The notes under the pieces were generated by a model that was not told the DNA's origin, did not search any database, and saw nothing but the letters and a program-made list of their open reading frames with translations. Positions 6,143-59,592 of a stretch of DNA of 64,000 nucleotides are shown piece by piece; position 1 is the first letter of the stretch, and each line of letters begins with the position of its first letter. Source of the DNA: Macrostomum lignano (lineage: Eukaryota); assembly GCA_002269645.1 (NCBI GenBank), contig NIVC01002200.1, forward strand, positions 62,001 to 126,000. The letters are read 5' to 3'. A program made the position numbers and the translations under genes.

Positions 6143-9100
6143 ATGGTAAATTTCCCTCTCTTATCAGCACTTCACCCACACTGAGAATCTCCTCTTCACC
6201 CACACTGACCATCTCCTCTTCACCCACACTGAGAATCCCTCTTCACACACACTGAGCATCTCCTCTTCACCCACACTGAGAATCTCCTCTTCACCCACAC
6301 TGAGAATCTCCTCTTCACCCACACTGAGAATCCCCTCTTCACCCACACTGAGAATCTCCTCTTCACCCACACTGAGAATCCCCTCTTCACCCACACTGAG
6401 AATCTCCTCTTCACCCACACGGAGAATCTCCTCTTCACCCACCCACACTGAGAATCTCCTCTTCACCCACACTGAGCATCTCCTCTTCACCCACACTGAG
6501 AATCTCCTCTTCACCCACACTGAGAATCCCCTCTTCACCCACACTGAGAATCTCCTCTTCACCCACACTGAGAATCTCCTCTTCACCCACCCACACTGAG
6601 AATCCCCTCTTCACCCACACTGAGAATCTCCTCTTCACCCACACTGAGCATCTCCTCTTCACCCACACTGAGAATCCCTCTTCACCCACACTGAGAATCC
6701 CCTCTTCACCCACACTGAGCATCCCTCTTCACCCACACTGAGAATCTCCTCTTCACCCACACTGAGAATCTCCTCTTCACCCACCCACACTGAGAATCCC
6801 CTCTTCACCCACACTGAGAATCTCCTCTTCACCCACACTGAGAATCTCCTCTTCACCCACACTGAGAATCCCCTCTTCACCCACACTGAGAATCTCCTCT
6901 TCACCCACATTGAGCATCTCCTCTTCACCCACACTGAGAATCCCCTCTTCACCCACACTGAGAATCCCCTCTTCACCCACACTGAGAATCTCCTCTTCAC
7001 CCACACTGAGAATCTCCTCTTCACCCACCCACACTGAGAATCCCTCTTCACCCACACTGAGAATCCCCTCTTCACCCACACTGAGAATCTCCTCTTCACC
7101 CACCCACACTGAGCATCTCCTCTTCACCCACACTGAGAATCCCCTCTTCACCCACACTGGAAATCGTCTCTAACTTTACTCCAAACCTGCACCCGTCAGG
7201 CCAGAGTCGCCCTTCTGCTCATCGCGGCCCTGTTAGCCCAGGTATCAATCGCCTGCGGCGCGAACCACTCCGCCGCCTCACCACCAGGCCGACTGCCCTT
7301 ACTAATCGTCATATTTGATGGATTCCGTCACGACTACCTCGAACTGTACCGCTCTAGAGGCGTTCAACTGCCAAATTTTGAAGCGTTCGCTAGTCAAGGC
7401 GTTCGAGCTAAACGGGTGAAGAACGTGTACCCTACGGAGACTCTGCCCAATCATCAGAGCCTGGTTACCGGACTCTACTCTGAGAGTCACGGTTTCATTT
7501 TGAACACGTTTGCCGATCCCGAATTGCCAGGCAAATTGTTCTCTGTCTTTGACCAGTCCAGTCTGAATGATCCCGACTGGTCTGCTGGCTGGCCGGAGCC
7601 GTTGTGGGTGACCAATCAGAGGCAGGGCGGCCGATCCGCCGTGGTGCTGTACCCGAATTCCGACCTGCCTTACAACGGCTTTTTGCCCTTTGTACAGGTA
7701 GGAGTTGGTATTAGATAACCTAAAACCTTTATTGGCCAACAAAAAATCATTACACTGGGGAAAGTCAATCTAGTAGATCTAGACAAACCAATCTAGTAGA
7801 TCTAGACAGGCCAGTCTAGCAGATCTAGACAAACCAGTCTAGTAGATCTAGATAGGCCAGTCTAGCAGATCTAGACAGGCCAGTTTAATAGATCTAGACA
7901 AGCCAGTCTACGAGCGTAGTAGATCTAGACAAGCCAATCCTAGACAAGCCAGTCTAGTAGATCTAGACAGGCCAGTCTAGCAGATCTAGACAAGCAATAT
8001 ATGGATCTAGACAAGCTAATCTAGCAGATCTAGATAAACCAATCTAGAAGATCTAGACAAGCCAGTCTATCAGATTTTGACAAGCTAGTCTGGTAGACCT
8101 AGACAAGCCAGTCTGGTAGATCTAGACAAGCTAATCTAGTAGATCTAGACAAGCTAATCTATTTTATCTAGACAAGCTAATCTAGTATATCTAGACAAGT
8201 TAATCTAGTATATCTAGACAAGTTAATCTAGTATATCTAGACAAGCTAATCTAGTATATCTAGACAAGCTAATCTAGTATATCTAGACAGCTAATCTAGT
8301 ATATCTAGAAAAGTTAATCTAGTATATCTAGACAAGTTAATCTAGTATATCTAGACAAGTTAATCTAGTATATCTAGACAAGTTAATCTAGTATATCTAG
8401 ACAAGTTAATCTAGTAGATCTAGACAAGCTAATCTAGTAGATCTAGGCAAGCCAACCCACCCCATCCACTCAACCCAGGTGGACCAGTACGCCACCCTGA
8501 ACAATGGCAGCTCAGTCCGCTATCCGTACAGCCGGCGGGTGAGTCGCATGCTGCACTGGCTGGGCCAGCCGCAGCTGTACGGCATTAATCTGGGCCTGTT
8601 GTACTTTGACGAGCCGGATCACACTGCCCACCAGGCTGGCCACCTGAGCGATGATGTTGCCGCCAGGCTAATAGAATTGGACCAACAGCTTGGCCAATTG
8701 ATGACCGGCTTAAAAGAGCTGGGCCTAACTGATCGAATCAATATCGTATTGACAGCCGATCACGGCATGACGACGGGCAATAGTCGAATCTAATTGACTT
8801 GGATCAAATAGTTAATCCGGATTGGTACGTTAATTACTTAGCCGATAAGGCTAATATACACCTGGGCTTAATGCCGAAACCAGGCCGAACTCAAGATATT
8901 ATTAAAGCCGTCTCGGACGCTAAATTGCCCTACCTGCGGGCTAACCTGGCCTCTCACCTGCCCGATTGGATGCACTTTAACGGGTCGCGGCGGACACCGC
9001 CAGTGTATTTGTACGCGGACCCCCCATACGTCATCGTGGTTGGCGGCATACCGCCTGAGCATCCTGCTAAGTTTGGCGTGCACGGCTACGCTAACAATGA

Positions 9101-9527
9101 CACGGATATGTGGCCTCTGTGGCTGGCTAGGGGGCCGGCATTTCAGTCTGGCGGAGTTGAGATTGATCAGCTGATTGAGTCTGTGGATCTTTATCCCCTG
9201 GCTTGCCGACTATTGGGCATCCGAGCTAATCCGAATAATGGCTCCCTAGATCGGATTAGCGCAGTGCTGTCTTCGCCCGACTGGCTATTGGTTGAGCCGA
9301 TACCAACTGGCAATAAGTTTATCGACAAATTTCTCTCAGACCTGTTTGATTGCTGGTTTAATAAATACAGGCCATATACTCCTGCCTTTGTACTTGGTGC
9401 TCTGTGTCTCTTCGTTTTGGCGCTACTGGTTATTGTTAGCTATCTGGCTTGTCAGTGGCGTACGCGATGGCTGAAGCTGCGGATTGATGCTCAATTTTAC
9501 CGCGCTGCTATTAGACTTAACAAGTGA
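6143..9527 (+). CDS. Ectonucleotide pyrophosphatase/phosphodiesterase, ENPP4/5-like, left copy (exons 6143-6145 [ATG only], 7200-7697, 8479-9527) with a 1-nt frameshift at ~8784
   Basis: Signal peptide M|ARVALLLIAALLAQVS; motifs FDGFRHDY, PTETLPNH (catalytic Thr), DEPDHTAH, TADHGM, HGY; C-terminal TM helix. GT-AG phase-0 introns with branch-like ctctaac before 7199. One T is missing versus the right-arm copy (agtcga vs agttcga), giving TAA at 8791-8793. Confidence 0.88.
6168..7160. repeat. 24-nt minisatellite (cacccacactgagaatctcctctt)n in ENPP intron 1
   Basis: Direct reading; source of the spurious WVKRRFSV / SVGEEEIL ORFs. Confidence 0.95.
7770..8450. repeat. ~23-nt TCTAGA-containing minisatellite in ENPP intron 2
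   Basis: Unit tctagacaagctaatctagtaga with variants. Confidence 0.9.
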
Positions 9528-9618
9528 CTAATTCAGTGACTAATTGGCTGCTCTCCTATTAAACAGGAACAGGGAAAGAATTAGAGCGGGGTTGTTGCAG
9601 TCTGTTCTGTTGGTCTTT

Positions 9619-9767
9619 GAGGCGGGGTTGCTACAGTAGCAGTGCGTCCTGCTGCTGCTCTCTTATTGGCTAGGAGGGGAAGGAATTGAGGCGGGGTTGC
9701 TACAGTAGCAGTGTGTCCTGCTGCTGCTCTCTTATTGGCTAGGAGGGGAAGGAATTGAGGCGGGGTT
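9619..9767. repeat. 69-bp minisatellite, part left of the LINE insertion
   Basis: Units start at 9619, 9688 and 9757 (the third is interrupted); unit gaggcggggttgctacagtagcagtgtgtcctgctgctgctctcttattggctaggaggggaaggaatt. Confidence 0.9.
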
Positions 9768-9857
9768 ACTTACTTACTTACTACTGACGGGGGGCGCAGG
9801 CGCCGCGAATAGGCCGCGAGGCCCCTATCGCAACCCCAAGGTAAAAGAGCACAAGGA

Positions 9858-14691
<4,834 letters not shown>

Positions 14692-15434
14692 CTACATGTA
14701 GAGCGTAGAGAAAATCGGAAGCAAAAGAATTGACAGTCTAAGCAGGTTTCCAAAAAGCTGTTGCTTAAAACAGCAATTTTTTACTTTTACGAAAGTTTTT
14801 ATTCTTCGATATTTATCCAATTTTATTTTTAGTTAGCGGCAGTCCGCCGCTGCTTATTTTTGACTGAATCCTTTCTAGCAGGTCTTCTAATAGACAAACA
14901 TCAACTCCCGTATTCCGGTGAACGCAAAGCAATTTTTTGCTTTGATATTTTCTTCTTTTTTAGCCACAGCTCATAGCTATCGATATCTTCGATGCCTTTA
15001 ATTTTTATATTACTCGTACTTCAAGTACTCTTGTATAGATATTCCAGTAGTTAAACAAATCATTTGCGTTGTTTTCTGTTATAATATAATATACGGCTGT
15101 GTTCCAGGTGCCTGCGTGCTGAAAATATATAAGCATATCGTAGTTCAATTTTTTAATTAGCGCGTCATCACACAGAGTGTACACCGGCCCCGACTTTGTG
15201 CACTGGAGAATGTGCACAAGCAACTAGCCGAAGTTTCAAGTTATCCCTATAGTTAATGTACTTTTTCACCAAATCCTCGCACATGTACTATAGACCAGAA
15301 GAAGAGAAGAGTGGATAAGCAGAGAAAAGTCAAACCTTGAGCGGGTCGGATTGCTGTTGTGAAGTGCCGACCCAGGTACACTAGGCAGTTAAGGCATTCA
15401 AATCTGCATGTAACAGATTGCTCGGCTCTTACAG

Positions 15435-16616
15435 TCATCCTCGCCTCGTCGCCACGGCCGCCGCCGCCGTCGTCAAGAAGTCTCGTCGGCAAGCGCCGTC
15501 GTGGCCGCTGCCAGCCTCATCGACGACCCTTTGTCGGCATTCGCTGTCGACGCGTCGAATTCGCCGGCTGTCGATACCGCTAGCGGTCAGCTGGTCTGTC
15601 GTCGAGCTCGGAACCTCGACGTCTGCCTTCGGCCCTGCGCCTTCGACTTGGTCCGGTCGAACATGCGCGACATGTACCGGCGCAGCGCCTGGGGCTGGAG
15701 CGACTCGGCTAAACGCAGAGAGCTGTTCCACCCGAAGGCTTATTTCCTGTTGCTGTTGCCGCTTCCAGAAGAGGCCGCAGGCGTTGCTGACTGCGGCCAG
15801 CAGCAGATTGTCGGGTTGGCCAACTTTCGGTTCGATTTGGAGGATGGCAAACCTGTGCTATATTTGTATGAGATTCAGGTTAGTGCTATGAGATTCAGGC
15901 TAGTGCTATGAGATTCAGGTTAGTGCTATGAGATTCAGGCAAGTGCTATGAGATTCAGGCAAGTGCTATGAGATTCAGGCAAGTGCTATGAGATTCAGGC
16001 AAGTGCTATGAGATTCAGGCAAGTGCTATGAGATTCAGATTAGTGCTATAAGATTCAGGCTAGTGCTATGAGATTCAGGCAAGTGCTATGAGATTCAGGT
16101 AAGTGCTATGAGATTCAGGCTAGTGCTATGAGATTTAAGCAGTTGCTATGAGATTCAGGCAAGTGCTACGATGTCAAACTGTGTTCAGCATTGTTCTATG
16201 AGAGTCAGGCTTTATGCATTCAAGTTTATTTTTGTAACACCGAAATCGAACCCGGGTCTTTCGGCGTCAAATCAACTTCGCTACGTAGGCTTAGTGGGGC
16301 TTTTTAAGTTTCGTTGCAGCTATATTAAAAATAGCAAAAAACTCTATTTTTACTACTATATTGCTGGTAGGTAGCGCCGGACTGTCGCAGGCGCGGCATT
16401 GGCCAACGCCTCCTGGCCTGTCTTCGCCGGGTTGCCACCGGCGCGGGAATGTCCGGCGTGGTGGCCACAGTTTTCAAATTCAATGGCGTTTCGTTGGAAT
16501 TTTTTGCTGCAGCTGGCTTTGAGCAAGAGCAGCCCGCGGCTGCGGCAGATCCCCACTATGCGATTCTGTGGCTTCCCCTGACTCGAGAGACCAATAAAAC
16601 ACGGAAAATAACTTAA
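15435..16616 (+). CDS. NAA40: N-alpha-acetyltransferase 40 (NatD)-like, left copy (exons 15435-15878, 16371-16616; initiator codon not found in the genome)
   Basis: Motifs AASLIDDPLSAF, AFDLVRSNMRDMYRRSAWGWSDSAKRREL, ANFRFDLEDGKPVLYLYEIQ|VAPDCRRRGIGQRLL (GNAT acetyl-CoA motif), ATVFKFN..SLEFF..YAIL. Donor cag|gttagt at 15878, acceptor ggtag|gta at 16370, acceptor ttacag at 15434; all phase 0. Confidence 0.85.
15868..16170. repeat. 20-nt minisatellite derived from the NAA40 exon/intron junction (tatgagattcag|gYWagtgc)
   Basis: The unit contains the last 12 exon nt plus a donor-like hexamer; ~15 copies. Confidence 0.9.
16215..16292 (-). other. Degenerate tRNA-like / SINE-like element in the NAA40 intron
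   Basis: The right-arm homolog (~50899-50960, +) reads gcctacgTAGCGAAGTTGA..ccggGGTTCGATTCCggtgttacaaaaat: A-box-like and B-box motifs, but the anticodon arm is missing. Confidence 0.35.
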
Positions 16617-16832
16617 CTGCGTTAATGCGCAAAAAACGCTACTTATTTTTTTCTCTAAAGTCAGTAGGCATTCGCGAATATGAATCTCAAACTAAATTTT
16701 TTGCATTTATTAGCTGATGCATTGTAGTTATTGTATTCATGTAGTAGGCGAATAGATATCATTATTGATAAATTGTTGCTATATTAAACTTGTCATTGAA
16801 TTTAGCACTAATTTTTCAAACTGAAGATTATC

Positions 16833-16846
16833 GTTGCCATAGCAAC
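16833..16846. promoter_or_regulatory. RFX X-box-like palindrome GTTGCCATAGCAAC
   Basis: Matches the GTNRCC-N0-3-RGYAAC consensus; lies in the convergent 3' region between NAA40 and PDI; retained in the right arm (50343-50356). Confidence 0.4.
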
Positions 16847-16871
16847 GGCGAAGACAAAATCTCGACAAATT

Positions 16872-17096
16872 TCAAAGCTCCTCTTTCTTCTTTGCTGGCT
16901 CGGCGGCTTCTTCCACGGGCTTTTTAGCTGGCTCGCCTGCGGCGCGTTTCTCCAAGAAAGCCAGCAAGCCGCTGGTGGTCACAGGCGACTCGGTGTAGCT
17001 CTCTCCCTTCTTCCCGTCTGCGAACAGCAGCAGCGTTGGAAAGCCTTCGATGTTGTTGTCCACGCAGATGCCTGCGGGTGGGGTGGGGTGGCTTGG

Positions 17097-17181
<85 letters not shown>

Positions 17182-17218
17182 ATATATCTATCTACCTATC
17201 TATCTATCTATCTATCTA

Positions 17219-17254
<36 letters not shown>

Positions 17255-17259
17255 TCTAA

Positions 17260-17339
<80 letters not shown>

Positions 17340-17411
17340 AATCTATCTAATATATCTATCTATCTATCTATCTATCTAACTATCTATCTATCTATCTGTC
17401 TATCTATCTAA

Positions 17412-17483
<72 letters not shown>

Positions 17484-17487
17484 TTAT

Positions 17488-17521
<34 letters not shown>

Positions 17522-17534
17522 GTCTATCTATCTG

Positions 17535-17595
<61 letters not shown>

Positions 17596-17618
17596 TTTTT
17601 TATCTATCTATCTATCTG

Positions 17619-17654
<36 letters not shown>

Positions 17655-20600
17655 ACTATCTATCTATCTGTCTATCTAACTATCAATCTATCTATCCATC
17701 TATCTATCCATCATCTACCTACAGCCCCACAGCACCTTCATTAGCCTTGACATCGCAGTTGACTCCGACCAGCGCAGCTGAGGAGTCCTTGCCGAGCTTC
17801 TCGGCAGCCGCATCGAACTGCGGCTTGGCCCGCTGGCAGTGCGAGCACCAGGGCGCGTAGAACATCGCCAGCACCAGCCGGCTGGACTTGAGCACAGCTG
17901 AGAACTGGTCCTGACCTTCAATTAGCCTGGCATGCTTCATCATATCCTCCGGTTTCTCAGCTTCGCTTTCCTCATCTTCATCCTCGGATTTGCCAGCCTC
18001 GCCGCCGCGGCCCGAACCCATCGACTTCTCCTTGGGCGGATTGGCCAGGAAGTTCAGCAGCTGTTTGGTCTCGATCTCTTCGTCGAATTCCGCCCACGCT
18101 TCGCCCTTCTTCAGTAGGCGAATTGTTGGGTAGCCCTCCACTTTGGCATCTTCGCACAGCTCTGCGGTGGGAATGGCGTTCGGGCTCGCTGTCAGTGCAC
18201 TGATCTCCATGTGTGATTCCCCTGACCCACTGTCAGTGCACTGATTCCCTGTGTGATTCCCCTGACTCACTGTCAGTGCACCGATTCCCCTGTGTGATTC
18301 CCCTGACTCGCTGTCAGTGCACTGATTCCCTGTGTGATTCCACTAACTCGCTGTCAGTGCACCGATTCCCCTGTGTGATTCCCCTGACTCGCTGTCAGTG
18401 CACCGATTCCCCTGTGTGATTCCCCTGACTCGCTGTCAGTGCACTGATTCCCTGTGTGATTCCCCTGACTCTCTCTCTCTCTCTCAGTGTACTGATTCCC
18501 CTGTGTAATTCCCCTGACTGACTGTCAGTGCACTGATTCCCCTGTGTGATTCCCCGTACTCACAGAAACTCTCAGCCGATCATTTCCCTGACTCACAGAA
18601 ACTGTCAGTTAATCATTCCCCCGACTCACTATGATTGTCTTTGACGTCACAATTGACGGCAGCCATCAGAGCAGCTGCTGCCTCGTCAGCCTTGGACTGA
18701 GCGCCCGCCCGCAGAGTCGCGGCCGCCCGAGCGAACTTCGGCTTGGCGTCCTGGCAGTGCGGGCACCAGGGGGCGTAGTAGAACACCAGGGCCAGCTCTC
18801 GGCCTGACAGCGTCTGCGTGTAATTGGCCGCCGTCAGATAGGTCACACCCTCCATGCTGCGGGTGTGGATACCGGCTGGGTTAGTGTGTGCACCCACAGG
18901 GATAGTGTACACCCACAGGGATAGTGTACACCTCAGGGACAGTGTACACCCACAGGGATAGTGTACACCCACAGAGACAGTGTACACCCACAGGGATAGT
19001 GTACACCCACAGGGATAGTGTACACCTCAGGGACAGTGTCCACCCACAGGGATAGTGTACACCCACAGAGACAGTGTACACCCACAGGGACAGTGTACAC
19101 CCACAGGGATAGTGTACACCCACAGAGACAGTGTACACCCACAGGGATAGTGTACACCCACAGGGATAGTGTACACCCACAGGGATAGTGTACACCTCAG
19201 GGACAGTGTCCACCCACAGGGATAGTGTACACCCACAGGGACAGTGTACACCCACAGGGACAGTGTACACCCACAGGGACAGTGTACACCCACAGGGATA
19301 GTGTGCACACACAGGGATAGTGTACATCCACAGGGATAGTGTACACCCATGGGGATAGTGTACACCCACAGAGATTGTGTGCACCCACAATGACGGTGTA
19401 CACCCGCGGGATAGTGTACATGTACACCCACAGCTCACACAGAGTCGGGTTCGGCAGGCCCGTCCTCCTCGGCCGACGAGCTTGGCGGCCGCTTCTCCCC
19501 CTCCTTCGGCGGGTTCCGCATGAAGGTCAGCAGCGCTTTTTCCGTCGATTCTTCCTCGAAGTCCTGCACCTGCTTGCCGCGGCTGTACAGCCGAAATGTT
19601 GGATAGCCTTCGATCTTCTCCTTGTCGCACAAGTCTTTGTTTGGTTGGGGGTTTGGGTTCAGGACTAGTTTCTATTCTACTCTACTTTACTCTACTCTGC
19701 CAATCATCTCTACTCTACCAGTCTATCCCTGCTCTACTCTACACACCAGTCTATTCCTACTCTACTCTACTCTACCAGTCTATTCCTACTCTACTCTACT
19801 CTACCAGTCTATTCCTACTCTACTCTACTCTACCAGTTTATTCCTACTCTACTCTACTCTACCTGTCTATTCCTACTCTACTCTACTCTACCTGTCTATT
19901 CCTACTCTACTCTACACTACCCGTCTGTCCCTACTCTACTCTACTCTACTCTACCAGTCTATTCCTACTCTACTCTACTCTACTAGTCTATTCCTACTCT
20001 ACTCTACTCTACCAGTCTATTCCTACTCTACTCTACTCTACCAGTCTATTCCTACTCTACTCTACACTACCAATCTGTCCCTACTCTACTCTACACTACC
20101 AGTCTGTCCCTACTCTACTCTACTCTACCTGTCTATTCCTACTCTACTCTACACTACCAGTCTGTCCCTACTCTACTCTACTCTACCAGTCTATTCCTAC
20201 TCTACTCTACTCTACCAGTCTATTCCTACTCTACTCTACTCTACCAGTCTATTCCTACTCTACTCTACACTACCAATCTGTCCCTACTCTACTCTACACT
20301 ACCAGTCTGTCCCTACTCTACTCTACTCTACCTGTCTATTCCTACTCTACTCTACACTACCAGTCTGTCCCTACTCTACTCTACTCTACCAGTCTATTCC
20401 TACTCTACTCTACTCTACCAGTCTATTCCTACTCTACTCTACTCTACCAGTTTATTCCTACTCTACTCTACTCTACCTGTCTATTCCTACTCTACTCTAC
20501 TCTACCTGTCTATTCCTACTCTACTCTACACTACCCGTCTGTCCCTACTCTACTCTACTCTACTCTACCAGTCTATTCCTACTCTACTCTACTCTACTAG

Positions 20601-50317: not shown

Positions 50318-50999
50318 AATTTGTCGAGATTTTGTCTTCGCCGTTGCTATGGCAACGATAATCTTCAGTTTGAAAAATTAGTGCTAAATTCAATGACAAG
50401 TTTAATATAGCAACAATTTATCAATAATGATATCTATTCGCCTACTACATGAATACAATAACTACAATGCATCAGCTGATAAATGCAAAAAATTTAGTTT
50501 GAGATTCATATTCGCGAATGCCTACTGACTTTAGAGAAAAAAATAAGTAGCGTTTTTTGCGCATTAACGCAGTTAAGTTATTTTCCGTGTTTTATTGGTC
50601 TCTCGAGTCAGGGGAAGCCACAGAATCGCATAGTGGGGATCTGCCGCAGCCGCGGGCTGCTCTTGCTCAAAGCCAGCTGCAGCAAAAAATTCCAACGAAA
50701 CGGCATTGAATTTGAAAACTGTGGCCACCACGCCGGACATTCCCGCGCCGGTGGCAACCCGGCGAAGACAGGCCAGGAGGCGTTGGCCAATGCCGCGCCT
50801 GCGACAGTCCGGCGCTACCTGCCAGCAATATAGTAGTAAAAATAGAGTTTTTTGCTATTTTTAATATAGCTGCAACGAAACTTAAAAAGCCCCACTAAGC
50901 CTACGTAGCGAAGTTGATTTGACGCGAAAGACCGGGGTTCGATTCCGGTGTTACAAAAATAAACTTGAATGCATAAAGCCTGACTCTCATAGAACAATG

Positions 51000-51360
51000 C
51001 TGAACACAGTTTGACATCGTAGCACTTGCCTGAATCTCATAGCAACTGCTTGAATCTCATAGCACCTGCTTGAATCTCGTAGCACTTGCCTGAATCTCAT
51101 AGCACCTGCTTAAATCTCATAGCACTTGCCTGAATCTCATAGCACCTGCTTAAATCTCATAGCACTTGCCTGAATCTCATAGCACTTGCCTGAATCTCAT
51201 AGCACCTGCTTGAAACTCATAGCACTAGCCTGAATCTCATAGCACTAACCTGAATCTCATAGCACTTGCCTGAATCTCATAGCACTAACCTGAATCTCAT
51301 AGCACTTGCCTGAATCTCAAAGCACTTGCCTGAATCTCATAGCACTTGCCTGAATCTCAT
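51000..51360. repeat. 20-nt exon-junction minisatellite (mirror of 15868-16170)
   Basis: Direct reading. Confidence 0.9.
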
Positions 51361-51489
51361 ACAAATATAGCACAGGTTTGCCGGCCTCCAAATCGAACCG
51401 AAAGTTGGCCAACCCGACAATCTGCTGCTGGCCGCAGTCAGCAACGCCTGCGGCCTCTTCTGGAAGCGGCAACAGCAACAGGAAATAAG

Positions 51490-52388
51490 TGTTGTAACCC
51501 GGGTCGGCTTGGGTGCCCAGTCCCGAGTACAATATATATTATATGTGATATAACAGGCGTTGTGACGCTCTGTCTGTACTTTTATGAATACGACGAGCAG
51601 GCGTGGCGACGCTCTGCGATAATAATTCGATCCCTCTGGTGTTGTGACACTCAGAGTTCACGCTGCGGCTCGAGGTGTGGTGACACTCTCGAGTGCTTCT
51701 ATTCTCTATACCGTAGGGCGTACGCAATATATATGGTAAACGGTACCGTACTACAGAAGCTATATGGTCTCCCGGCGTTATGACGCTCTGGCAAGAATTC
51801 GGCCTAGCAAGCTTCCCGGAAAGAAAGGACTCAAACAGCAGGCGGCTTACCAGTGGCCAGATGACTGTTCACCGTTTATTATTCGCAGGTCTCAAGCGCA
51901 GTTTCCGACTTCTTCTTAATTCTCCAAGACTCTTCTCAATTAGGCTATTGTGTTTCTTTTATCGAAGTAGCTAATGTTGCTGTTTCTTTTATCGAAGTAG
52001 CTAATGTTGCTGTTTCTTTTATCAGGTCTCGCGCTTGCACTCTCGGAGCACACCAAAACACAAAAAGCACGCCGGTGGCGGGCAAGAGCCAGAGTCGCAC
52101 CATAAATAGCACCCAAACCCTGGGGCAGACGGCCCCACCGGCTAAGCTCACCAAAACAAACCACGCCGGCCCAGCCAATCAAAACCCCGCCTAAGGGGGG
52201 AGGGGCTGCACCCGCGCCAAAGCTGGCCCGGCCGCAGCCAACCAGCCCTGAGCACGGGGCAGGGGCACGGCTGGGGAGGGGCACGCGCAAAGCCCGGCCG
52301 GGGCCAGACCCTGCCACGCCCGCCAACCCCCCCAACCAGCCCCAAAGTGCAACGCGCCCTGCCAACTGACAAGGGCGCATGCACTACA
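51490..52388 (-). repeat. 3' LTR
   Basis: No difference seen by eye from 57581-58479; sense-strand TATTTAT (52102-52108) and AATAAA (51875-51880); internal 30-nt tandem duplication at ~51951-52023. Confidence 0.95.
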
Positions 52389-52399
52389 CCCTCCCTCCT
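52389..52399 (-). other. Polypurine tract AGGAGGGAGGG
   Basis: Abuts the 3' LTR on the sense strand. Confidence 0.85.
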
Positions 52400-52654
52400 A
52401 CAAAAAAAACAGGGCGGAGCTCGAACCACGGCGACTGGGATTCCAAATTTTTTAAATAACAAAGCAAAAAAAATCAAAAACAACAAAAAAAATTGGGAAC
52501 AAACTAATGCAACAGGGAAAAGCAAAAAAAAGGTTGCCGCAAGAGAAATATGAAAAAGGTACTAGTATTCTGCACGCGAGTTCGTCAGGAGCAACCACGG
52601 GGCACGGAATAGGCCTTCAAAGCTGGCGGCACAGAAAACCATCGCAGGCGGCCG

Positions 52655-53110
52655 GCAGGACGAGCAGATGGCCGGGCGGGACGCGCAAGTTGCCGACAGG
52701 ACACGCAGGTGGCCAGCAGGAAGCGCAGATGGCCGGGCGGGAAGCGCAGGTTGCCGACAGGACGCGCAGATGGCCGGGCAGGAAGCGCAGGTTGCCGACA
52801 GGACGCGCAGATGGCCGACAGGGCACGCAGGTTGCCGACAGGACGCGCAGATGGCCGACAGGGCACGCAGGTGGCCGGCAAGACGCGAAGGCGGCCGGGC
52901 GAGGCGCGCAGATGGCCGGGCGGGAAGCGCACGTGGCCGCCGCAGAAGCCGGCAGGAAGCGCAGGTGGCCGCCGCAGAAGCCGGCAGGAAGCGCAGGTGG
53001 CCGCCGCAGAAGCCGGCAGGAAGCGCACGTGGCCGCCGCAGAAGCCGGCACGAAGCGCACGTGGCCGCCGCAGAAGCCGGCAGGAAGCGCACGTGGCCGC
53101 CGCACAGCTG
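52655..53110. repeat. GC-rich tandem array (~20-nt and 32-nt units) in the Gypsy 3' region
   Basis: Cores gcagatggcc / gcaggtggcc / gcacgtggcc. Confidence 0.85.
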
Positions 53111-53141
53111 CTGAGCCATTCCCCCAGGAAGCTTGACCCCA

Positions 53142-54917
53142 CTAGCATGCAAATAAACCCATACAGTACGAGCGTAACCACATACATACAAGTAAGCAGA
53201 AAATACAGTATGAATCGGAACTGGGCACCCTAGCGAACCCGAAGTCCAGGGACGCCAGATTGCCGGCTGAGAATCGTTCAAATTCGACTGCATTTAGTCC
53301 TTCTGGATGCTGCGCACATGCCGGGCATGTCTCCGCTCCGAAATGTCTCCGTACTGGCTTCCTCGACATTGCGTCCGCGTTGCCATGCGATCGACCTGGT
53401 CTGTGAACGATGCGGTACTGAAATGGAGCCAACTTCTCCAACCAGCGAGCAACCTGTCCCTCGGCGTCACTGAAGTTTTTTAACCATTGCAGGCTGCTGT
53501 GGTCCGTTCGCAGACAGAACGCTTTTCCAAGCAGATAGTATCTGAACTTCATGATGAAAGTCACAACCGCTAGTAGTTCTAAACGAGTCGTACAATAGTT
53601 GCGTTCGGCTTGATTTAGTGTCTTGGACCCATAGGCGATCACTCGTTCTGCTCCATCTGGCTGGACTTGAGAAAGTACCGCTCCTATGCCCATCTTCGAA
53701 CTGCCATCAGTATCGAGGATAAACTCTCCGGCATCCGGGGAGAAATCCGGATGAGCCATAACCTCTGAACTTGTCATTCGTTCCTTCAATGTTTCGAACG
53801 CCAGCTGCTGTTCCGTTTTCCATTCAAACTTTGCGTCTTTTGTTGTCAATCGAGTTAGAGGCGCTGCTATTGCGGCGAAATCTTTAATAAACTTTCTGTA
53901 ATAGCCACACAGGCCCAAGAATGAATGCAGCTCCGTCGAGGATCGCGGTGTTGGCCAGTTCTTCACTTCTTGAACTTTCTCCTCATCGGTACTGATGCCA
54001 GCAGCCGACAGCGTGTGACCGAGAAATTTCACTTGCTTTTGCAAAAAGTGACACTTCTGGGGCTTCAGGCACAAATTTGCTTGCCGCAACTTGCTGAATA
54101 TTTCCTCCAGTCTTCTCAGGTGTTCATCCACGTCGGTTGACCAAACCAGTAGATCGTCGATGTAGACGAGACAGGTTTTCCACATCTGCTTGTCCAGAAC
54201 GGCTGCCATCAACCTGGTGAATGTTGCTGGGCTGTTCACTAAGCCGAACGGCATAACCTTCCATCGAAATTGTCCGCGATGCGGCACTGCAAACGCCGTC
54301 TTGTCCTGATCCTGAGGTCTCACCCCTACTTGCCAAAACCCGCTGTGAAGGTCCATTGTCGAGAAGATCTTGGCGCCGTGTACTGCCTCCAGCGCATCAT
54401 CGACCCTCGGCATCGGCACTGCATCCTTGACGGTGACCTCATTCAACTTCCGATAATCGACGCACATCCTCATTTCCCCTGATTTCTTCTTTACACACAC
54501 CAAAGGAAAGCACCATGGTGACTGTGCTTCTTCGATCTGCCCCTTTTCCAGCAACTCGTTGACTTGACGATCTACTTCTGGCTGTAAGTGGGGAGGCAGA
54601 CGACGCGGTGGGATCTTGATTGGGCGCGCATTCTCGGTGTTAATTTCATGCTCCACCACGGTAGTTAACTTGCTTGAAGTCTGCTTGGTCGTGAACACAT
54701 CGCTGTAACTCCGGACAAGGATTCTAAATTCTTCGTCTTCTTTCGTCGACAGTCCACAGTCGCCGTACGAGTTTGGTAGCAAGTCTGCTTCCGAAGGGCT
54801 GTTGCTGCCTTGGACCTTCGGCTCTTCCTGTGGATCGTCTCCTGACTCTACGGCTAAGAGCTTGATGGTGTTCAACGGTTCGGTGGATTCTAGGGGCAGA
54901 ACCACCCGAGCGTACAA
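53142..54917 (-). CDS. pol: Gypsy Pol: reverse transcriptase and RNase H
   Basis: Motifs RMCVDYRKLN, FSTMDLHSGFWQV, MPFGLVNSPATF, YIDDLL, VKFLGH, FLGLCGYYRKFI, LDTDGS..GIGAVLSQ, NYCTTRLELLAV, RWLEKL..HRPG..NADAMSR. Confidence 0.95.
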   Translation of the reverse strand: MYARVVLPLESTEPLNTIKLLAVESGDDPQEEPKVQGSNSPSEADLLPNSYGDCGLSTKEDEEFRILVRSYSDVFTTKQTSSKLTTVVEHEINTENARPIKIPPRRLPPHLQPEVDRQVNELLEKGQIEEAQSPWCFPLVCVKKKSGEMRMCVDYRKLNEVTVKDAVPMPRVDDALEAVHGAKIFSTMDLHSGFWQVGVRPQDQDKTAFAVPHRGQFRWKVMPFGLVNSPATFTRLMAAVLDKQMWKTCLVYIDDLLVWSTDVDEHLRRLEEIFSKLRQANLCLKPQKCHFLQKQVKFLGHTLSAAGISTDEEKVQEVKNWPTPRSSTELHSFLGLCGYYRKFIKDFAAIAAPLTRLTTKDAKFEWKTEQQLAFETLKERMTSSEVMAHPDFSPDAGEFILDTDGSSKMGIGAVLSQVQPDGAERVIAYGSKTLNQAERNYCTTRLELLAVVTFIMKFRYYLLGKAFCLRTDHSSLQWLKNFSDAEGQVARWLEKLAPFQYRIVHRPGRSHGNADAMSRKPVRRHFGAETCPACAQHPEGLNAVEFERFSAGNLASLDFGFARVPSSDSYCIFCLLVCMWLRSYCMGLFAC

Positions 54918-54993
54918 CCTTGGCGAATTCTGACTGGCTCCTCCGTGATATTGATGAGTCGAGTCGGCAGACGGCTGCCGCTATTTGGGATCA

Positions 54994-56505
54994 CTAAGGC
55001 CTTAGCAAGCCAGCGGCCAGCTGCCAAATCGTTCGCCCGAGATTCTCAGTTAGGCCGACACACCCTCTGTTCCGTCGTCCTTTGCTCTCCAGCCTTGCTG
55101 ACAGAACTGCTTGATGACCTGGCGGTATTGTGCTGGACCTTGTCGCCAAAATTCTGCAAACGATCGGGCGCTCAGCTTGCCATCGGAACGGGATTGCAGT
55201 GTCCTGCACTGAAAAGACAGCTGTCTTGTAGTCGATGACGCAACTGTTGTCCCTGCAGAAGTCGGATCCCAATACCAGTTGGTACTTCACTCCGCTGACT
55301 ACCAAGGCTGGAGTATCTATTACTTTATCAGCGATTGACAGTCGCAACAGGACTGTTCTCTCGATTTCGATCGGGCTGCCGTTTGCTAAGCTAACGTAGC
55401 CTTCAGCACCGGCCAAATCTCTGACGCTCTGTTTCGGCATACTTTGGTAAGCTTCCCGTGAGATAATGGTGCAGGAAGCTCCCGAGTCCACTAGCGCGTT
55501 CACCCTCCGCCCTGCGATTGAGGCCGTAACATATATCGACGCAGGATTGATTTGAATTGACTGAGGTGCGTTGACGGTGATTGGGCGCTGCGACTGTGCA
55601 AAACCGGCTAGTTGATGGTGAGGTGCAGTACCGGACGCTGGAGGCTGATGAGGCACTGTAACGGACACTGGATGCTGATGAGACTCAGTACCGGACACTG
55701 TAGGCTGATGAGGCGCAGTACCGGACACTGGAGGCTGATGAGGCACTGTACCGGACACTGGATGCTGATGAGACACAGTACCGGACACTGGATGCTGATG
55801 AGGCACTGTACCGGACACTGGAGGCTGATGAGGCGCAGTACCGGACACTGGATGCTGATGAGGCGCAGTACCGGACGCTGGAGGCTGATGAGGCGCAGTA
55901 CCGGACACTGGATGCTGATGAGGCGCAGTACCGGACACTGAATGCTGATGAGGCGCAGTACCGGACACTGGAGGCTGATGAGGCACTGTACCGGACACTG
56001 GATGCTGATGAGACACAGTACCGGACACTGGATGCTGATGAGACTCAGTACCGGACACTGTAGGCTGATGAGGCGCAGTACCGGACACTGGAGGCTGATG
56101 AGGCACTGTACCGGACACTGGATGCTGATGAGACACAGTACCGGACACTGGAGGCTGATGAGACGCTGTACCGGACGCTGGAGGCTGATGAGGCGCAGTA
56201 CCGGACACTGAATGCTGATGAGGCGCAGTACCGGACACTGGATGCTGATGAGGCGCAGTACCGGACACTGGAGGCTGATGAGATGAAGTACCGGACACTG
56301 GATGCTGATGAGGCGCAGTACCGGACACTGGAGGCTGATGAGACGCAGTACCGGGCGTTTGATGATGATGAGATGAGATGACGACTTGTTCGGAGGCTGA
56401 CGAATTGCAGGGGCTCACTTGCCTCCAGCTGGTGGGCCCCTCTAGCCTTTTCCCGGCTTTGGGCACTGGAATGAGAGATGGCCTATCTCCCCGCAGTTGT
56501 AGCAC
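54994..56505 (-). CDS. Gypsy Pol N-terminus: 24x10-aa repeat linker plus aspartic protease (entered by a -1 frameshift)
   Basis: ALVDSGASCTIIS retropepsin motif and LVLGSDF; two apparent 1-nt losses (~55030, ~54905) separate it from the RT frame. Confidence 0.88.
   Translation of the reverse strand: MLQLRGDRPSLIPVPKAGKRLEGPTSWRQVSPCNSSASEQVVISSHHHQTPGTASHQPPVSGTAPHQHPVSGTSSHQPPVSGTAPHQHPVSGTAPHQHSVSGTAPHQPPASGTASHQPPVSGTVSHQHPVSGTVPHQPPVSGTAPHQPTVSGTESHQHPVSGTVSHQHPVSGTVPHQPPVSGTAPHQHSVSGTAPHQHPVSGTAPHQPPASGTAPHQHPVSGTAPHQPPVSGTVPHQHPVSGTVSHQHPVSGTVPHQPPVSGTAPHQPTVSGTESHQHPVSVTVPHQPPASGTAPHHQLAGFAQSQRPITVNAPQSIQINPASIYVTASIAGRRVNALVDSGASCTIISREAYQSMPKQSVRDLAGAEGYVSLANGSPIEIERTVLLRLSIADKVIDTPALVVSGVKYQLVLGSDFCRDNSCVIDYKTAVFSVQDTAIPFRWQAERPIVCRILATRSSTIPPGHQAVLSARLESKGRRNRGCVGLTENLGRTIWQLAAGLLRP
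55619..56352. repeat. 30-nt coding tandem repeat (24 units; T-A/V-P/S-H-Q-H/P-P-V-S-G)
   Basis: Perfect 30-nt period without indels. Confidence 0.95.
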
Positions 56506-57335
56506 TTGACACCGCTACGCTGCTTCGAGCTGGACGGAGCCGCCTGCTTGGATTGTTGCTTGTCTTGAAGACCGGGTTCGGGCGGCTCCTGCTGGCCCTG
56601 CTGGATCTGCTCCATCCGTCGGATCTTTTCTTCTATTTCCTTTACTTTTTGACGCAGTTGCCGTAGCTCCTCGTCTTTGCCGGTGTCACCTGTCGACGTT
56701 TCGGTGGCAAAGGCATTCAGCCCAGCCCTGGGTCTGGCTTTGGACTGGGTCGAAGACGCCTTCTGGGCTGCTTCAAGTTGTCTTACTGTTCGAATGGCAT
56801 CGGTGAGGTTGGCCGGCTGCTGCAGGTACAGTCTTTCTCGGACAGTGTCGGTTACTCGAACGCCTTTTAGAAATCTGTCTTTCGCCAGCTCTGTCCTGGT
56901 GTCGGCATCCGCGGTGGGGAAGGCATTGCGCACCAACTCCAGCAGCTCGTCCCCGTAGGTCTCCACAGACTCCTTGTCTAGCTGATCTCGATTCGATAAT
57001 TCAAAACGGTAGTCCTGGGCTGTTCTGTTCATGGTGAACCGCGCCAGCAGTGCATCCGTGAATTCCCCGTACTCGATGTCGTCTGCCAAGTCCAGCTTAT
57101 CAACGGCAGCGTAGGCTGTTGTGAGGTCGAGTAGGCCGATCAGGTGCGGCCGCCTGGCTTCTTCTTCTATACCGACAGCCTCGCAGTACTCGTTGAAACT
57201 CTGCAGCCATAGGCTGAAATTCATCGTTGGTATGTACTTGGGCGGCTTCGAGAGTCGTGGCGCTGCTCGGTCGGCGTTGGCTCTGAGGCGCGCAGCCAGC
57301 GCATCGATCAGTTGGTCCATAGCTTGATCACCCAT
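56442..57335 (-). CDS. gag: Gypsy Gag with CCHC zinc knuckle
   Basis: First ATG at 57335; capsid-like helical region and CYNCGEIGHLSFQC; TAG at 56444-56442. Confidence 0.92.
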   Translation of the reverse strand: MGDQAMDQLIDALAARLRANADRAAPRLSKPPKYIPTMNFSLWLQSFNEYCEAVGIEEEARRPHLIGLLDLTTAYAAVDKLDLADDIEYGEFTDALLARFTMNRTAQDYRFELSNRDQLDKESVETYGDELLELVRNAFPTADADTRTELAKDRFLKGVRVTDTVRERLYLQQPANLTDAIRTVRQLEAAQKASSTQSKARPRAGLNAFATETSTGDTGKDEELRQLRQKVKEIEEKIRRMEQIQQGQQEPPEPGLQDKQQSKQAAPSSSKQRSGVKCYNCGEIGHLSFQCPKPGKG

Positions 57336-57559
57336 GGCCGAAGTCACTGAATACCGTTGCTACTCTTTACTCTGAGGTGGTGATAGCTATCAATCTCTGA
57401 TAACCAATCAGTTGTCTGTCACCGTGATCAATGTCTTTTGCGGTAGGGCAATAGCCGCAAGCGATAAGCAACAGTCGTTTTAATAAGAAAAAACGCTCAC
57501 AATATGACAGCAATTTTCATAGAAAGCAACTGAGCCGACTTTCAATCTTTGGGGACAGG

Positions 57560-57577
57560 GTCCCTGTTCGGGCGCCA
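57560..57577 (-). other. Primer-binding site TGGCGCCCGAACAGGGAC (tRNA-Lys UUU, 'Lys3')
   Basis: 18-nt perfect complement of the 3' end of tRNA-Lys3, 3 nt downstream of the 5' LTR. Confidence 0.92.
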
Positions 57578-57580
57578 ATT

Positions 57581-58479
57581 TGTTGTAACCCGGGTCGGCT
57601 TGGGTGCCCAGTCCCGAGTACAATATATATTATATGTGATATAACAGGCGTTGTGACGCTCTGTCTGTACTTTTATGAATACGACGAGCAGGCGTGGCGA
57701 CGCTCTGCGATAATAATTCGATCCCTCTGGTGTTGTGACACTCAGAGTTCACGCTGCGGCTCGAGGTGTGGTGACACTCTCGAGTGCTTCTATTCTCTAT
57801 ACCGTAGGGCGTACGCAATATATATGGTAAACGGTACCGTACTACAGAAGCTATATGGTCTCCCGGCGTTATGACGCTCTGGCAAGAATTCGGCCTAGCA
57901 AGCTTCCCGGAAAGAAAGGACTCAAACAGCAGGCGGCTTACCAGTGGCCAGATGACTGTTCACCGTTTATTATTCGCAGGTCTCAAGCGCAGTTTCCGAC
58001 TTCTTCTTAATTCTCCAAGACTCTTCTCAATTAGGCTATTGTGTTTCTTTTATCGAAGTAGCTAATGTTGCTGTTTCTTTTATCGAAGTAGCTAATGTTG
58101 CTGTTTCTTTTATCAGGTCTCGCGCTTGCACTCTCGGAGCACACCAAAACACAAAAAGCACGCCGGTGGCGGGCAAGAGCCAGAGTCGCACCATAAATAG
58201 CACCCAAACCCTGGGGCAGACGGCCCCACCGGCTAAGCTCACCAAAACAAACCACGCCGGCCCAGCCAATCAAAACCCCGCCTAAGGGGGGAGGGGCTGC
58301 ACCCGCGCCAAAGCTGGCCCGGCCGCAGCCAACCAGCCCTGAGCACGGGGCAGGGGCACGGCTGGGGAGGGGCACGCGCAAAGCCCGGCCGGGGCCAGAC
58401 CCTGCCACGCCCGCCAACCCCCCCAACCAGCCCCAAAGTGCAACGCGCCCTGCCAACTGACAAGGGCGCATGCACTACA
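57581..58479 (-). repeat. 5' LTR
   Basis: 899 bp, TGTAGTG...ACAACA on the sense strand. Confidence 0.95.
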
Positions 58480-59592
58480 TAAGCCTCCGGGTGGAACAGC
58501 TCTCTGCGTTTAGCCGAGTCGCTCCAGCCCCAGGCGCTGCGCCGGTACATGTCGCGCATGTTCGACCGGACCAAGTCGAAGGCGCAGCGCCGAAGGCAGA
58601 CGTCGAGGTTCCGAGCTCGACGACAGACCAGCTGACCGCTAGCGGTATCGACAGCCGGCGAATTCGACGCGTCGACAGCGAATGCCGACAAAGGGTCGTC
58701 GATGAGGCTGGCAGCGGCCACGACGGCGCTTGCCGACGAGACGTCTTGACGACGGCGGCGGCGGCCGTGGCGACGAGGCGAGGATGACTGTAAGAGCCGA
58801 GCAATCTGTTACATGCAGATTTGAATGCCTTAACTGCCTAGTGTACCTGGGTCGGCACTTCACAACAGCAATCCGACCCGCTCAATGTTTGACTTTTCTC
58901 TGCTTCTCCACTCTTCTCTTCTTCTGGTCTATAGTACATGTGCGTGGATTTGGTGAAAAAGTACATTAACTATAGGGATAACTTGAAACTTCGGCTAGAT
59001 GCTTGTGCACATTCTCCAGTGCACAAAGTCGGGGCCGGTGTACACTCTGTGTGATGATGCGCTAATTAAAAAAAATCAAACTACGATATGCTTATATATT
59101 TTCAGCACGCAAGCACCTGGAACATATATATTATATTATAACAGAAAACAACGCAAATGATTTGTTTAACTACTGGAATATCCATACAAGAGTACTTGAA
59201 GTACGAGTAATATAAAAATTAAAGGCATCGAAGATATCGATAGCTATGAGCTGTGGCTAAAAAAGAAGAAAATATTGAATATTAATATCAGAGCAAAAAA
59301 TTGCTTAGGGCTCACCGGAATACGGCAGTTGATGTTTGTCTATTAGAAGACCTGCTAGAAAGGATTCAGTCAAAAATAAGCAGCGGCGGACTGCCGCTAA
59401 CTAAAAAATAAAATTGGATAAATGTCGAAGAATAAAAACTTTCGTAAAAGTAAAAAATAACTTTTTAGCAACAGCTTTTTGGAAACCTGCTTAGACTGTC
59501 AATTCTTTTGCTTCAGATTTTCTCCACGCTCTACATGTAGTATAGAGCGTTTCTATCTCGGCCATTTCTTCGCCGGACCAATCAGAGATCAA

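What the first reader, a model, noticed from the sequence alone, without database searches (positions are those of the whole stretch)
15376..15665. NAA40 has no genomic start codon: candidate for AUG donated by a flatworm spliced leader
Seen in both arms: the conserved NAA40 frame opens right after a phase-0 acceptor (ggctcttacag|TCA TCC.., 15434/15435) and encodes a basic N-terminal stretch (SSSPRRHGRRRRRQE). The first in-frame ATG comes only ~76 codons later, inside the conserved domain. The nearest upstream donor (cccag|gtacac, 15375) leads to a frame with no ATG before TAA at 15316-15318. Established: flatworm spliced leaders end in AUG, and in Schistosoma this AUG can initiate translation. 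Inference: SL trans-splicing at 15435 would supply the Met exactly in frame.
Basis: partly seen in the sequence, partly recalled or inferred. Interest (0 to 1): 0.75.

Follow-up and report, generated by a model that had tools for sequence, protein, structure and literature searches.

The report
NAA40 start codon supplied by spliced leader
A conserved flatworm enzyme gene (NAA40 of Macrostomum lignano) has no start codon of its own in the genome and most likely borrows the AUG at the end of the trans-spliced leader RNA; this mechanism is already known in flatworms, so it is a neat but ordinary example.

Summary
The window is Macrostomum lignano. Its NAA40 reading frame opens at a TTACAG| acceptor (15434/15435). 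An in-frame TAA lies 7 codons upstream. The first in-frame ATG is codon 77 (15663-15665), deep inside the GNAT fold. The frame aligns with human NAA40 from residue 6 (human residue 12). All 20 aligned orthologues either start with Met 1-19 residues before the equivalent position or are themselves N-terminally partial, so the true N-terminus must lie at or near the acceptor. A search of the upstream sequence found no ATG-bearing exon with a credible donor. The published M. lignano spliced leader (35 nt) ends in ATG, and the acceptor fits the published trans-splice motif [T/C]TNCAG. About 45% of conserved M. lignano genes are trans-spliced. The public UniProt model of this gene begins, without Met, at exactly the same codon. 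SL trans-splicing donating an in-frame AUG is therefore the best explanation (about 0.75). No RNA evidence could be reached with these tools. The mechanism has been established in Schistosoma since 2006, so this is a new member of a known kind. One correction: the second (inverted) copy shares the 5' end, but its exon 1 is split by a 7-kb LTR retrotransposon.

The parts
15411..15413 (+). In-frame TAA that closes the NAA40 frame 7 codons upstream of the acceptor. It directly follows an ATG at 15408-15410.
15417..15434 (+). End of the putative outron: a pyrimidine-rich tract (attgctcggctcttacag) ending in TTACAG. This matches the M. lignano trans-splice acceptor motif [T/C]TNCAG. A second, weaker AG at 15415-15416 (gtaacag|att) would also be in frame.
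   Evidence: motif from PMC8629364
15435..15878 (+). NAA40 coding exon 1 (148 codons, no initiator ATG). It begins SSSPRRHGRRRRRQE and ends LYLYEIQ at the donor CAG|gttagt.
15663..15665 (+). First in-frame genomic ATG (codon 77). It aligns with the nearly invariant Met of the NM..Y motif inside the catalytic domain.
15879..16370 (+). Intron 1. Its 5' part is a tandem array of about 15 20-bp units (15867-16171) that copy the exon/intron junction itself.
   Evidence: junction EIQ|VAPD confirmed by the public model
16371..16616 (+). NAA40 coding exon 2 (81 codons plus stop TAA 16614-16616). It carries the acetyl-CoA motif RRRGIG.
58479..58787 (-). Inverted second copy: the 5' part of exon 1 (codons 1-103), with the same acceptor and start. 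It has three nonsynonymous differences (E15D, P67R, K101E).
51490..58478 (-). Ty3/gypsy-type LTR retrotransposon inserted in exon 1 of the second copy. It encodes gag/zinc knuckle, aspartyl protease, RT and RNase H. The 300-nt LTR segments compared (51490-51789 and 57581-57880) are 100% identical, and the 5-bp target duplication is CTTAT.
50573..50818 (-). Second copy, exon 2 (one substitution, NGV to NAV).
8479..9527 (+). 3' exons of an ENPP-like (type I phosphodiesterase, PF01663) gene on the same strand. Its stop is TGA 9525-9527, with ATTAAA at 9558-9563. It is a possible upstream partner of NAA40 in an operon.
9771..14141 (-). Non-LTR retrotransposon (endonuclease + RT) inserted into a 69-bp tandem array between the ENPP-like gene and NAA40. 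It is absent from the second copy.

Best explanation
The pre-mRNA of Macrostomum lignano NAA40 is SL trans-spliced at the TTACAG| acceptor (15434/15435). The 35-nt spliced leader ends in AUG, and the exon starts in phase 0. The mature mRNA therefore reads ...UUGCAUG|UCA UCC UCG..., and the leader's AUG starts a 230-residue protein, M-SSSPRRHGRRRRRQE.... The genome itself encodes no usable start codon for the conserved N-terminal 76 residues. Shown here: the gene structure, the phase, the absence of a genomic ATG, the homology of the N-terminal stretch, and the match to the acceptor motif. Taken from the literature: the SL sequence and how common trans-splicing is in this species. Inferred: that this particular acceptor receives the SL, and that ribosomes start at that AUG.
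For: (1) Species: the protein is identical to UniProt A0A1I8IMC5 of M. lignano outside one frameshifted stretch. (2) The M. lignano SL is CGGTCTCTTACTGCGAAGACTCAATTTATTGCATG, and the trans-splice acceptor motif is [T/C]TNCAG. 30% of all genes and 45.3% of human-conserved genes are trans-spliced (PMC8629364). The terminal ATG is conserved in Macrostomum SLs and is called a translation start codon in PMC10468722. (3) The acceptor is TTACAG|, has 10 of 16 upstream pyrimidines, and is in phase 0. (4) An in-frame TAA lies 7 codons upstream, and the first ATG is codon 77. (5) Human NAA40 aligns from query residue 6 to human residue 12, E = 7.9e-28. In a 21-sequence alignment, 19 of 20 orthologues begin with Met 1-19 residues before the column of S1, and one is a partial entry. 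Met77 sits on a nearly invariant internal Met. (6) Every GT donor giving an ATG-initiated, stop-free join to any AG acceptor between 15300 and 15500 was enumerated. None scored above 3 of 7 against the donor consensus in the sequence shared by both copies. (7) The public model starts at exactly S1 without Met and uses the same intron. That is the expected result when SL-bearing transcripts are mapped to the genome. (8) Two genomic copies and a model from a different assembly agree on the 5' sequence. (9) The mechanism is established: in S. mansoni, more than 40 cDNAs need the SL AUG (Cheng et al. 2006, as summarised in PMC9851317).
Against: No RNA read, cDNA or peptide was seen. The acceptor motif is short (about 1 in 512 positions by chance) and fits only 44% of known sites. 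The argument from where the public model starts is indirect, because I could not read how that annotation was made. A cis exon further upstream, or one with an unusual donor, cannot be formally excluded. No other flatworm NAA40 was available for comparison.
Confidence: 0.75

Rival explanations
1. A conventional cis-spliced 5' exon carrying ATG (perhaps a micro-exon encoding something like MG(R/K)K) lies upstream, was missed, and splices to the 15435 acceptor.
For: Nearly all metazoan orthologues start MG(R/K)KS... a few residues before the position aligned with S1, so a short missing exon would restore the usual N-terminus. Acceptors can be shared between cis- and trans-splicing in flatworms (PMC12582326).
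Against: The enumeration covered the shared upstream 1.3 kb and the 240 bp after the ENPP-like stop. It found only ATG 14992 with the donors GTACTT/GTACTC (score 3/7), which would encode MPLIFILL.., and no better combination for any nearby acceptor. The other candidates lie inside a LINE that the second copy lacks. Further upstream the strand is occupied by another gene. The public model has no such exon.
Confidence: 0.1
2. Translation starts on the genomic sequence itself. It would begin either at Met77 (15663), giving a truncated protein, or at a near-cognate codon such as ATT 15417 on non-trans-spliced RNA.
For: ATG 15663 is the first in-frame ATG. ATT 15417 lies just after the TAA and in frame.
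Against: A start at Met77 would remove residues that align with human NAA40 residues 12-82, including the conserved AA..DPL..F and AFDL segments. These are present in the crystallised core constructs, whose alignment starts at query residues 12-20 (4u9w, 7kd7, 4u9v). The 76 codons stay open and homologous, which would be unexpected for a 5' UTR. On unspliced RNA, seven upstream ATGs with short ORFs precede the frame.
Confidence: 0.07
3. The locus is a decaying duplicate that lost its start codon, and the functional NAA40 lies elsewhere in this polyploid genome.
For: The region is an inverted duplication full of transposon insertions. The sister copy is clearly broken by an LTR element, and its three differences are all nonsynonymous.
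Against: The copy at 15435 keeps an uninterrupted 229-codon frame with all 11 invariant columns of the family alignment and the RRRGIG motif. The only M. lignano NAA40 in a 5.8-billion-protein collection is this same sequence, with the same Met-less start.
Confidence: 0.05
4. An assembly error (an indel in the GC-rich CGCCGCCGCCG stretch or upstream) hides a genomic ATG.
For: The public ML2-derived protein does contain a frameshifted stretch, which shows that indel errors occur in assemblies of this genome.
Against: Two copies in this window and the independent public model agree on the first 50 residues and on the start. None of the ATGs within 800 nt upstream, in any frame, opens an ORF longer than 20 codons.
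Confidence: 0.03

Closest known systems
Schistosoma mansoni mRNAs that use the SL 3'-terminal AUG as initiator methionine (Cheng, Cohen, Ndegwa & Davis 2006, J Biol Chem 281:733; cited in PMC12582326, PMC9851317, PMC5832876)
   Same: A flatworm SL ending in AUG. The acceptor is placed so that the AUG is in frame with a conserved ORF that has no start codon of its own. The recipient is an ordinary housekeeping gene.
   Different: The species and clade differ (a free-living macrostomorph, not a parasitic trematode), as does the SL sequence. Here the junction and its translation are inferred, not shown by cDNA or reporter assays.
slORFs: ORFs created by start codons within spliced leaders (slORFfinder, PMC9851317)
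   Same: The start codon comes from the leader and the rest of the ORF from the recipient exon. It is the in-frame class, sharing the stop codon with the main ORF.
   Different: Those were called from SL-containing RNA-seq reads plus ribosome footprints in nematodes, Oikopleura and trypanosomes. No such data were available here, and M. lignano was not analysed there.
Human NAA40 / NatD (PDB 4U9W, 4U9V, 7KD7, 9RG7)
   Same: Full-length homology (E about 1e-27, query residues 6-200 against human 12-194). It has a basic N-terminal stretch, the AA..DPL..F segment, a GNAT core and the R-x-x-G-x-G acetyl-CoA motif.
   Different: The near-universal metazoan start MG(R/K)KS is absent. The predicted N-terminus is M-SSSPRRHG, 5-6 residues shorter and without Gly2. 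It also lacks the Cys/His-rich C-terminal tail.

Membership tests
Flatworm mRNAs initiated at the SL-donated AUG | The organism has an SL RNA whose leader ends in AUG directly before the donor. | not testable with these tools
   No SL RNA gene lies in the window. The feature is taken from the literature for M. lignano (PMC8629364; PMC10468722). The species assignment was tested.
Flatworm mRNAs initiated at the SL-donated AUG | The SL is joined to the acceptor at the 5' end of the ORF in mature mRNA. | not testable with these tools
   No RNA data could be reached. Indirect support: the acceptor matches [T/C]TNCAG, and the public model starts at that base.
Flatworm mRNAs initiated at the SL-donated AUG | The donated AUG is in frame with the conserved ORF. 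| tested here: met
   The exon starts at 15435 in phase 0 of the NAA40 frame. The alternative AG at 15416/15417 is also in frame.
Flatworm mRNAs initiated at the SL-donated AUG | No genomic in-frame AUG can encode the conserved N-terminus. | tested here: met
   TAA lies 7 codons upstream and the first ATG is codon 77. No credible ATG-bearing cis exon was found.
Flatworm mRNAs initiated at the SL-donated AUG | Translation actually begins at the SL AUG. | not testable with these tools
   This needs Ribo-seq, N-terminal proteomics or a reporter assay.
NAA40 / NatD N-terminal acetyltransferase | A GNAT fold with the acetyl-CoA binding motif Q/R-x-x-G-x-G/A. | tested here: met
   PF00583 E = 2.7e-11, PF13508 E = 3.9e-8, and motif RRRGIG in exon 2.
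NAA40 / NatD N-terminal acetyltransferase | Family-specific homology over the whole length, including the N-terminal segment preceding the GNAT core. | tested here: met
   The best PDB hits are all NAA40 (E = 7.9e-28 to 1.3e-26, query residues 6-200). All 11 invariant columns of a 21-sequence NAA40 alignment are kept. Named database hits are NAA40.
NAA40 / NatD N-terminal acetyltransferase | Acetylates the Ser-Gly-Arg-Gly N-termini of histones H4 and H2A. | not testable with these tools
   This is a biochemical property and is only inferred from homology.
M. lignano operon (Ustyantsev & Berezikov 2021 criterion) | Same-strand neighbour, downstream gene SL trans-spliced, repeat-adjusted intergenic distance under 1 kb. 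| tested here: inconclusive
   The ENPP-like gene ends at 9527 on the same strand. The distance to 15435 is 5907 bp, or about 883 bp after subtracting the LINE and the 69-bp arrays. In the second copy it is 1261 bp, or about 895 bp adjusted. Trans-splicing of NAA40 itself has not been shown.

The most novel reading that the evidence does not exclude
NAA40 in Macrostomum has lost the near-universal metazoan start (ATG-GGN..., MG(R/K)KS) and depends entirely on SL trans-splicing for its start codon. Production of the full-length histone H4/H2A N-terminal acetyltransferase would then be gated by trans-splicing, which is strongly enriched among neoblast genes. RNA that is not trans-spliced could yield at most a truncated product starting at Met77. 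Annotation pipelines that trim the SL would also systematically lose or truncate such genes.
Probability: 0.15. Interest if true: 0.5.

Novelty: new member of a known kind. Interest (0 to 1): 0.3.

Why it matters
If confirmed, this is a clean case in a free-living model flatworm of a conserved chromatin-modifying enzyme that cannot be translated correctly without SL trans-splicing. The practical consequences are for annotation and for transgenesis. The public protein entry for this gene lacks its Met, and this gene's only representative found in the searched collection is a Met-less UniProt model. Any expression construct or rescue transgene built from genomic sequence would need an ATG added. 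The example would also help in counting how many M. lignano genes rely on the SL AUG; none of the M. lignano papers read here reports that figure. It does not reveal a new mechanism.

Tried and rejected
- **Transcript look-ups.** The public model P0001 is on no contig in the collection.
- **Junction 30-mer.** An exact search for SL 3' end plus exon start in metagenome contigs gave 0 hits.
- **Literature and supplements.** No paper combines M. lignano and NAA40. NAA40 is absent from the held supplements of Wudarski 2017, Grudniewska 2016 and Grudniewska 2018. Wasik et al. 2015, the source of the public model, is not held.
- **SL RNA gene in the window.** None was found by pattern search with 3 mismatches, and Rfam gave no hits.
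- **Orthologues from other flatworms.** The exhaustive representative search found 1819 homologues, but only P0001 above 50% identity. The profile search listed no named flatworm NAA40 other than P0001. Whether the SL-dependent start is conserved therefore could not be tested.
- **dN/dS between the two copies.** There are only three differences in 103 codons, all nonsynonymous, which is too few to interpret.
- **Rejected explanations.** Assembly error, pseudogene, a start at Met77, and a cis micro-exon; see the rival explanations.

Full report
**What is there**

A pyrimidine-rich stretch ends in ctcTTACAG (AG at 15433-15434). From 15435 an open frame encodes SSSPRRHGRRRRRQEVSSASAVVAAASLIDDPLSAF... 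and runs to a phase-0 donor, CAG|gttagt, at 15878/15879. A second exon (16371-16613, stop TAA 16614-16616) completes a 229-codon frame that carries the GNAT acetyl-CoA motif RRRGIG. Pfam assigns it to the GNAT acetyltransferases (PF00583, E = 2.7e-11). The best solved-structure matches are all human NAA40 (E = 7.9e-28 to 1.3e-26).

Seven codons upstream of the acceptor the frame is closed by TAA (15411-15413), which directly follows an ATG. The first in-frame ATG downstream is codon 77, at 15663-15665. The donor-like site cccag|gtacac (15375/15376) is real. Its phase-0 frame runs back to TAA 15316-15318 without an ATG.

**Organism**

The assembled protein is identical to UniProt A0A1I8IMC5, annotated as N-alpha-acetyltransferase 40 of Macrostomum lignano. 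The exception is one 17-residue stretch where the public entry reads a shifted frame. In that stretch the window's frame (LVCRRARNLD) matches human NAA40 (IECKRVSGLE). The public entry therefore carries the error, not the window. The window is M. lignano, and the 'flatworm' guess was right.

**Is the stretch before Met77 really coding, and where is the N-terminus?**

HMMER aligns query residues 6-200 with residues 12-194 of full-length human NAA40. I aligned the protein with 20 orthologues found by an exhaustive search. Nineteen begin with Met 1-19 residues before the column that holds S1 of the M. lignano frame; the twentieth is a partial entry. The basic stretch, the AA..DPL..F segment and the AFDL..NM..Y segment are all shared. 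Met77 falls on a nearly invariant internal Met.

Most metazoan orthologues start MG(R/K)KS(A)K.KEKK. The M. lignano frame begins within the equivalent basic stretch, and the predicted protein would be 5-6 residues shorter than the human one. The protein's true N-terminus must therefore lie at, or a few residues before, the acceptor. A start at Met77 would delete about a third of the conserved protein.

**Is there a genomic way to supply a Met?**

- On unspliced RNA there is none. TAA blocks the frame, and the seven ATGs in the 800 nt upstream each run into a stop within 20 codons.
- For cis-splicing, I enumerated every GT between the end of the upstream gene (9528) and the acceptor that would join an ATG-initiated, stop-free frame to 15435.
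- I then repeated this for every AG acceptor between 15300 and 15500, in all phases.
- In the sequence shared by both copies of the locus, only ATG 14992 with the donors GTACTT/GTACTC qualifies. These match 3 of 7 consensus positions and would encode MPLIFILL.
- No combination reached 4 of 7. The better-scoring candidates all lie inside a LINE element that the sister copy lacks.

**What the literature says about this species**

- M. lignano has one 35-nt spliced leader, CGGTCTCTTACTGCGAAGACTCAATTTATTGCATG, followed by GTAAG in the SL RNA gene.
- The motif at trans-splice acceptors is [T/C]TNCAG.
- 30% of all genes and 45.3% of genes conserved with human are trans-spliced.
- About 40% of trans-spliced genes lie in operons, defined by a repeat-adjusted intergenic distance under 1 kb (PMC8629364).
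- The terminal ATG is conserved in the SLs of M. cliftonense and M. hystrix and is labelled a translation start codon (PMC10468722).
- All reported flatworm SLs end in ATG (PMC12582326).
- In Schistosoma mansoni, more than 40 cDNAs need that AUG to start translation in the right frame (Cheng et al. 2006, as summarised in PMC9851317; also PMC5832876).

**Putting it together**

The acceptor here, TTACAG|, fits the motif exactly and is in phase 0. Trans-splicing would therefore give ...UUGCAUG|UCAUCCUCG... and a 230-residue protein beginning M-SSSPRR. An alternative AG 18 nt upstream (gtaacag|ATT, 15416/15417) lies just after the TAA and is also in frame, so the conclusion does not depend on which AG is used.

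The public gene model gives independent, if indirect, support. It uses the same intron and begins, without Met, at exactly S1 rather than at the upstream end of the open frame. That is what is expected when SL-bearing transcripts are aligned to a genome that lacks the SL.

I rate SL donation of the start codon at about 0.75. The rivals are:
- a missed cis exon (0.10);
- initiation at Met77 or a near-cognate codon (0.07);
- a decaying duplicate (0.05);
- an assembly error (0.03).

**Context**

- *Upstream gene.* On the same strand lies an ENPP-like phosphodiesterase gene (PF01663). It ends at TGA 9525-9527, with ATTAAA at 9558-9563.
- *Intergenic distance.* The 5.9-kb gap contains a 4.4-kb non-LTR retrotransposon on the opposite strand, inserted into a 69-bp tandem array. 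Without the repeats the distance is about 0.9 kb in both copies. By the published criterion the pair would count as an operon if NAA40 is trans-spliced. This is an inference only.
- *Inverted duplication.* The locus is one arm of a large inverted duplication: 8133-9770 matches 61445-59804, 14275-15743 matches 59957-58479, and 15739-20618 matches 51489-46652, at about 95-96% identity.
- *The second copy.* The sister NAA40 copy has the same acceptor and start (58787, minus strand). Its exon 1 is split after codon 103 by a 7-kb Ty3/gypsy-type LTR retrotransposon. The 300-nt LTR segments compared are 100% identical, and the target duplication is 5 bp, CTTAT. 'Seen in both arms' is therefore true for the 5' end, but only one copy is intact.

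**What could not be done**

No tool gave access to M. lignano RNA data, so the SL-exon junction itself was not observed.
- The Met-prefixed protein could not be looked up.
- The public model is on no contig in the collection.
- The junction 30-mer is absent from the metagenome contigs.
- NAA40 does not appear in the supplements held for three M. lignano papers.
- The paper behind the public annotation is not held.
- No named NAA40 from another flatworm appeared in either large protein search. Conservation of this arrangement across flatworms remains untested.

**Verdict**

The mechanism has been known in flatworms for two decades, and the terminal ATG of the Macrostomum SL has already been flagged as a start codon. 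This is a new, well-defined example of a known kind. Its value is mainly for annotation and for construct design in this model organism. Interest: 0.3.

Noticed in passing
window 15867-16171 (and 51017-51361 in the inverted copy): Intron 1 of NAA40 opens with about 15 tandem 20-bp units that duplicate the exon 1/intron 1 junction itself (TATGAGATTCAG|GTTAGTGC). Some units keep GT at the donor position (GTTAGT, GTAAGT) and others have GC. Using a downstream unit as donor would shift the frame unless three units were skipped.
   Followed up: partly
window 51490-58478 (- strand): A recently inserted Ty3/gypsy-type LTR retrotransposon lies inside exon 1 of the second NAA40 copy. It encodes gag with a zinc knuckle, aspartyl protease, RT and RNase H. 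It has LTRs identical over at least 300 nt, a 5-bp target duplication CTTAT, and an internal 30-bp tandem array at 55466-56485.
   Followed up: yes
window 9771-14141 (- strand): A non-LTR retrotransposon (848-aa ORF with endonuclease and RT domains) with a (GTAA)n tail at 9767-9781. It is inserted into a 69-bp tandem array and is present in only one arm of the duplication.
   Followed up: partly
window ~6170-20618 versus ~64000-46652: A large inverted duplication (about 95-96% identity) flanks a ~26-kb unique centre. Each arm carries ENPP-like, NAA40 and thioredoxin-domain genes and many mini-satellite arrays (24-bp, 69-bp, 20-bp, 8-bp and 19-bp units). It was not determined whether this is a real palindrome or an assembly join of homeologous copies.
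   Followed up: no
UniProt A0A1I8IMC5 (P0001) versus window 15585-15640: The public M. lignano NAA40 entry contains a frameshifted stretch (AGLSSSSEPRRLPSA instead of GQLVCRRARNLDVCLRP). The window's frame is the one that matches human NAA40, so the public entry probably carries two compensating indel errors as well as lacking its Met.
   Followed up: yes
window 3304-3894 (+), 17719-18270 (-): Other conserved genes in the window: an XPA-like ORF (PF05181/PF01286) that begins with its own ATG, and a thioredoxin-domain (PDI-like) gene on the minus strand converging on the NAA40 3' end. Their 5' ends were not examined for SL-type starts.
   Followed up: no
PDB entries 9rg7 (chain N4) and 9syr (chain Nd): Full-length human NAA40 now appears as chains N4 and Nd in two newer PDB entries. 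Whether the basic N-terminal stretch, which the M. lignano frame retains from its first residue, makes contacts in them was not examined.
   Followed up: no
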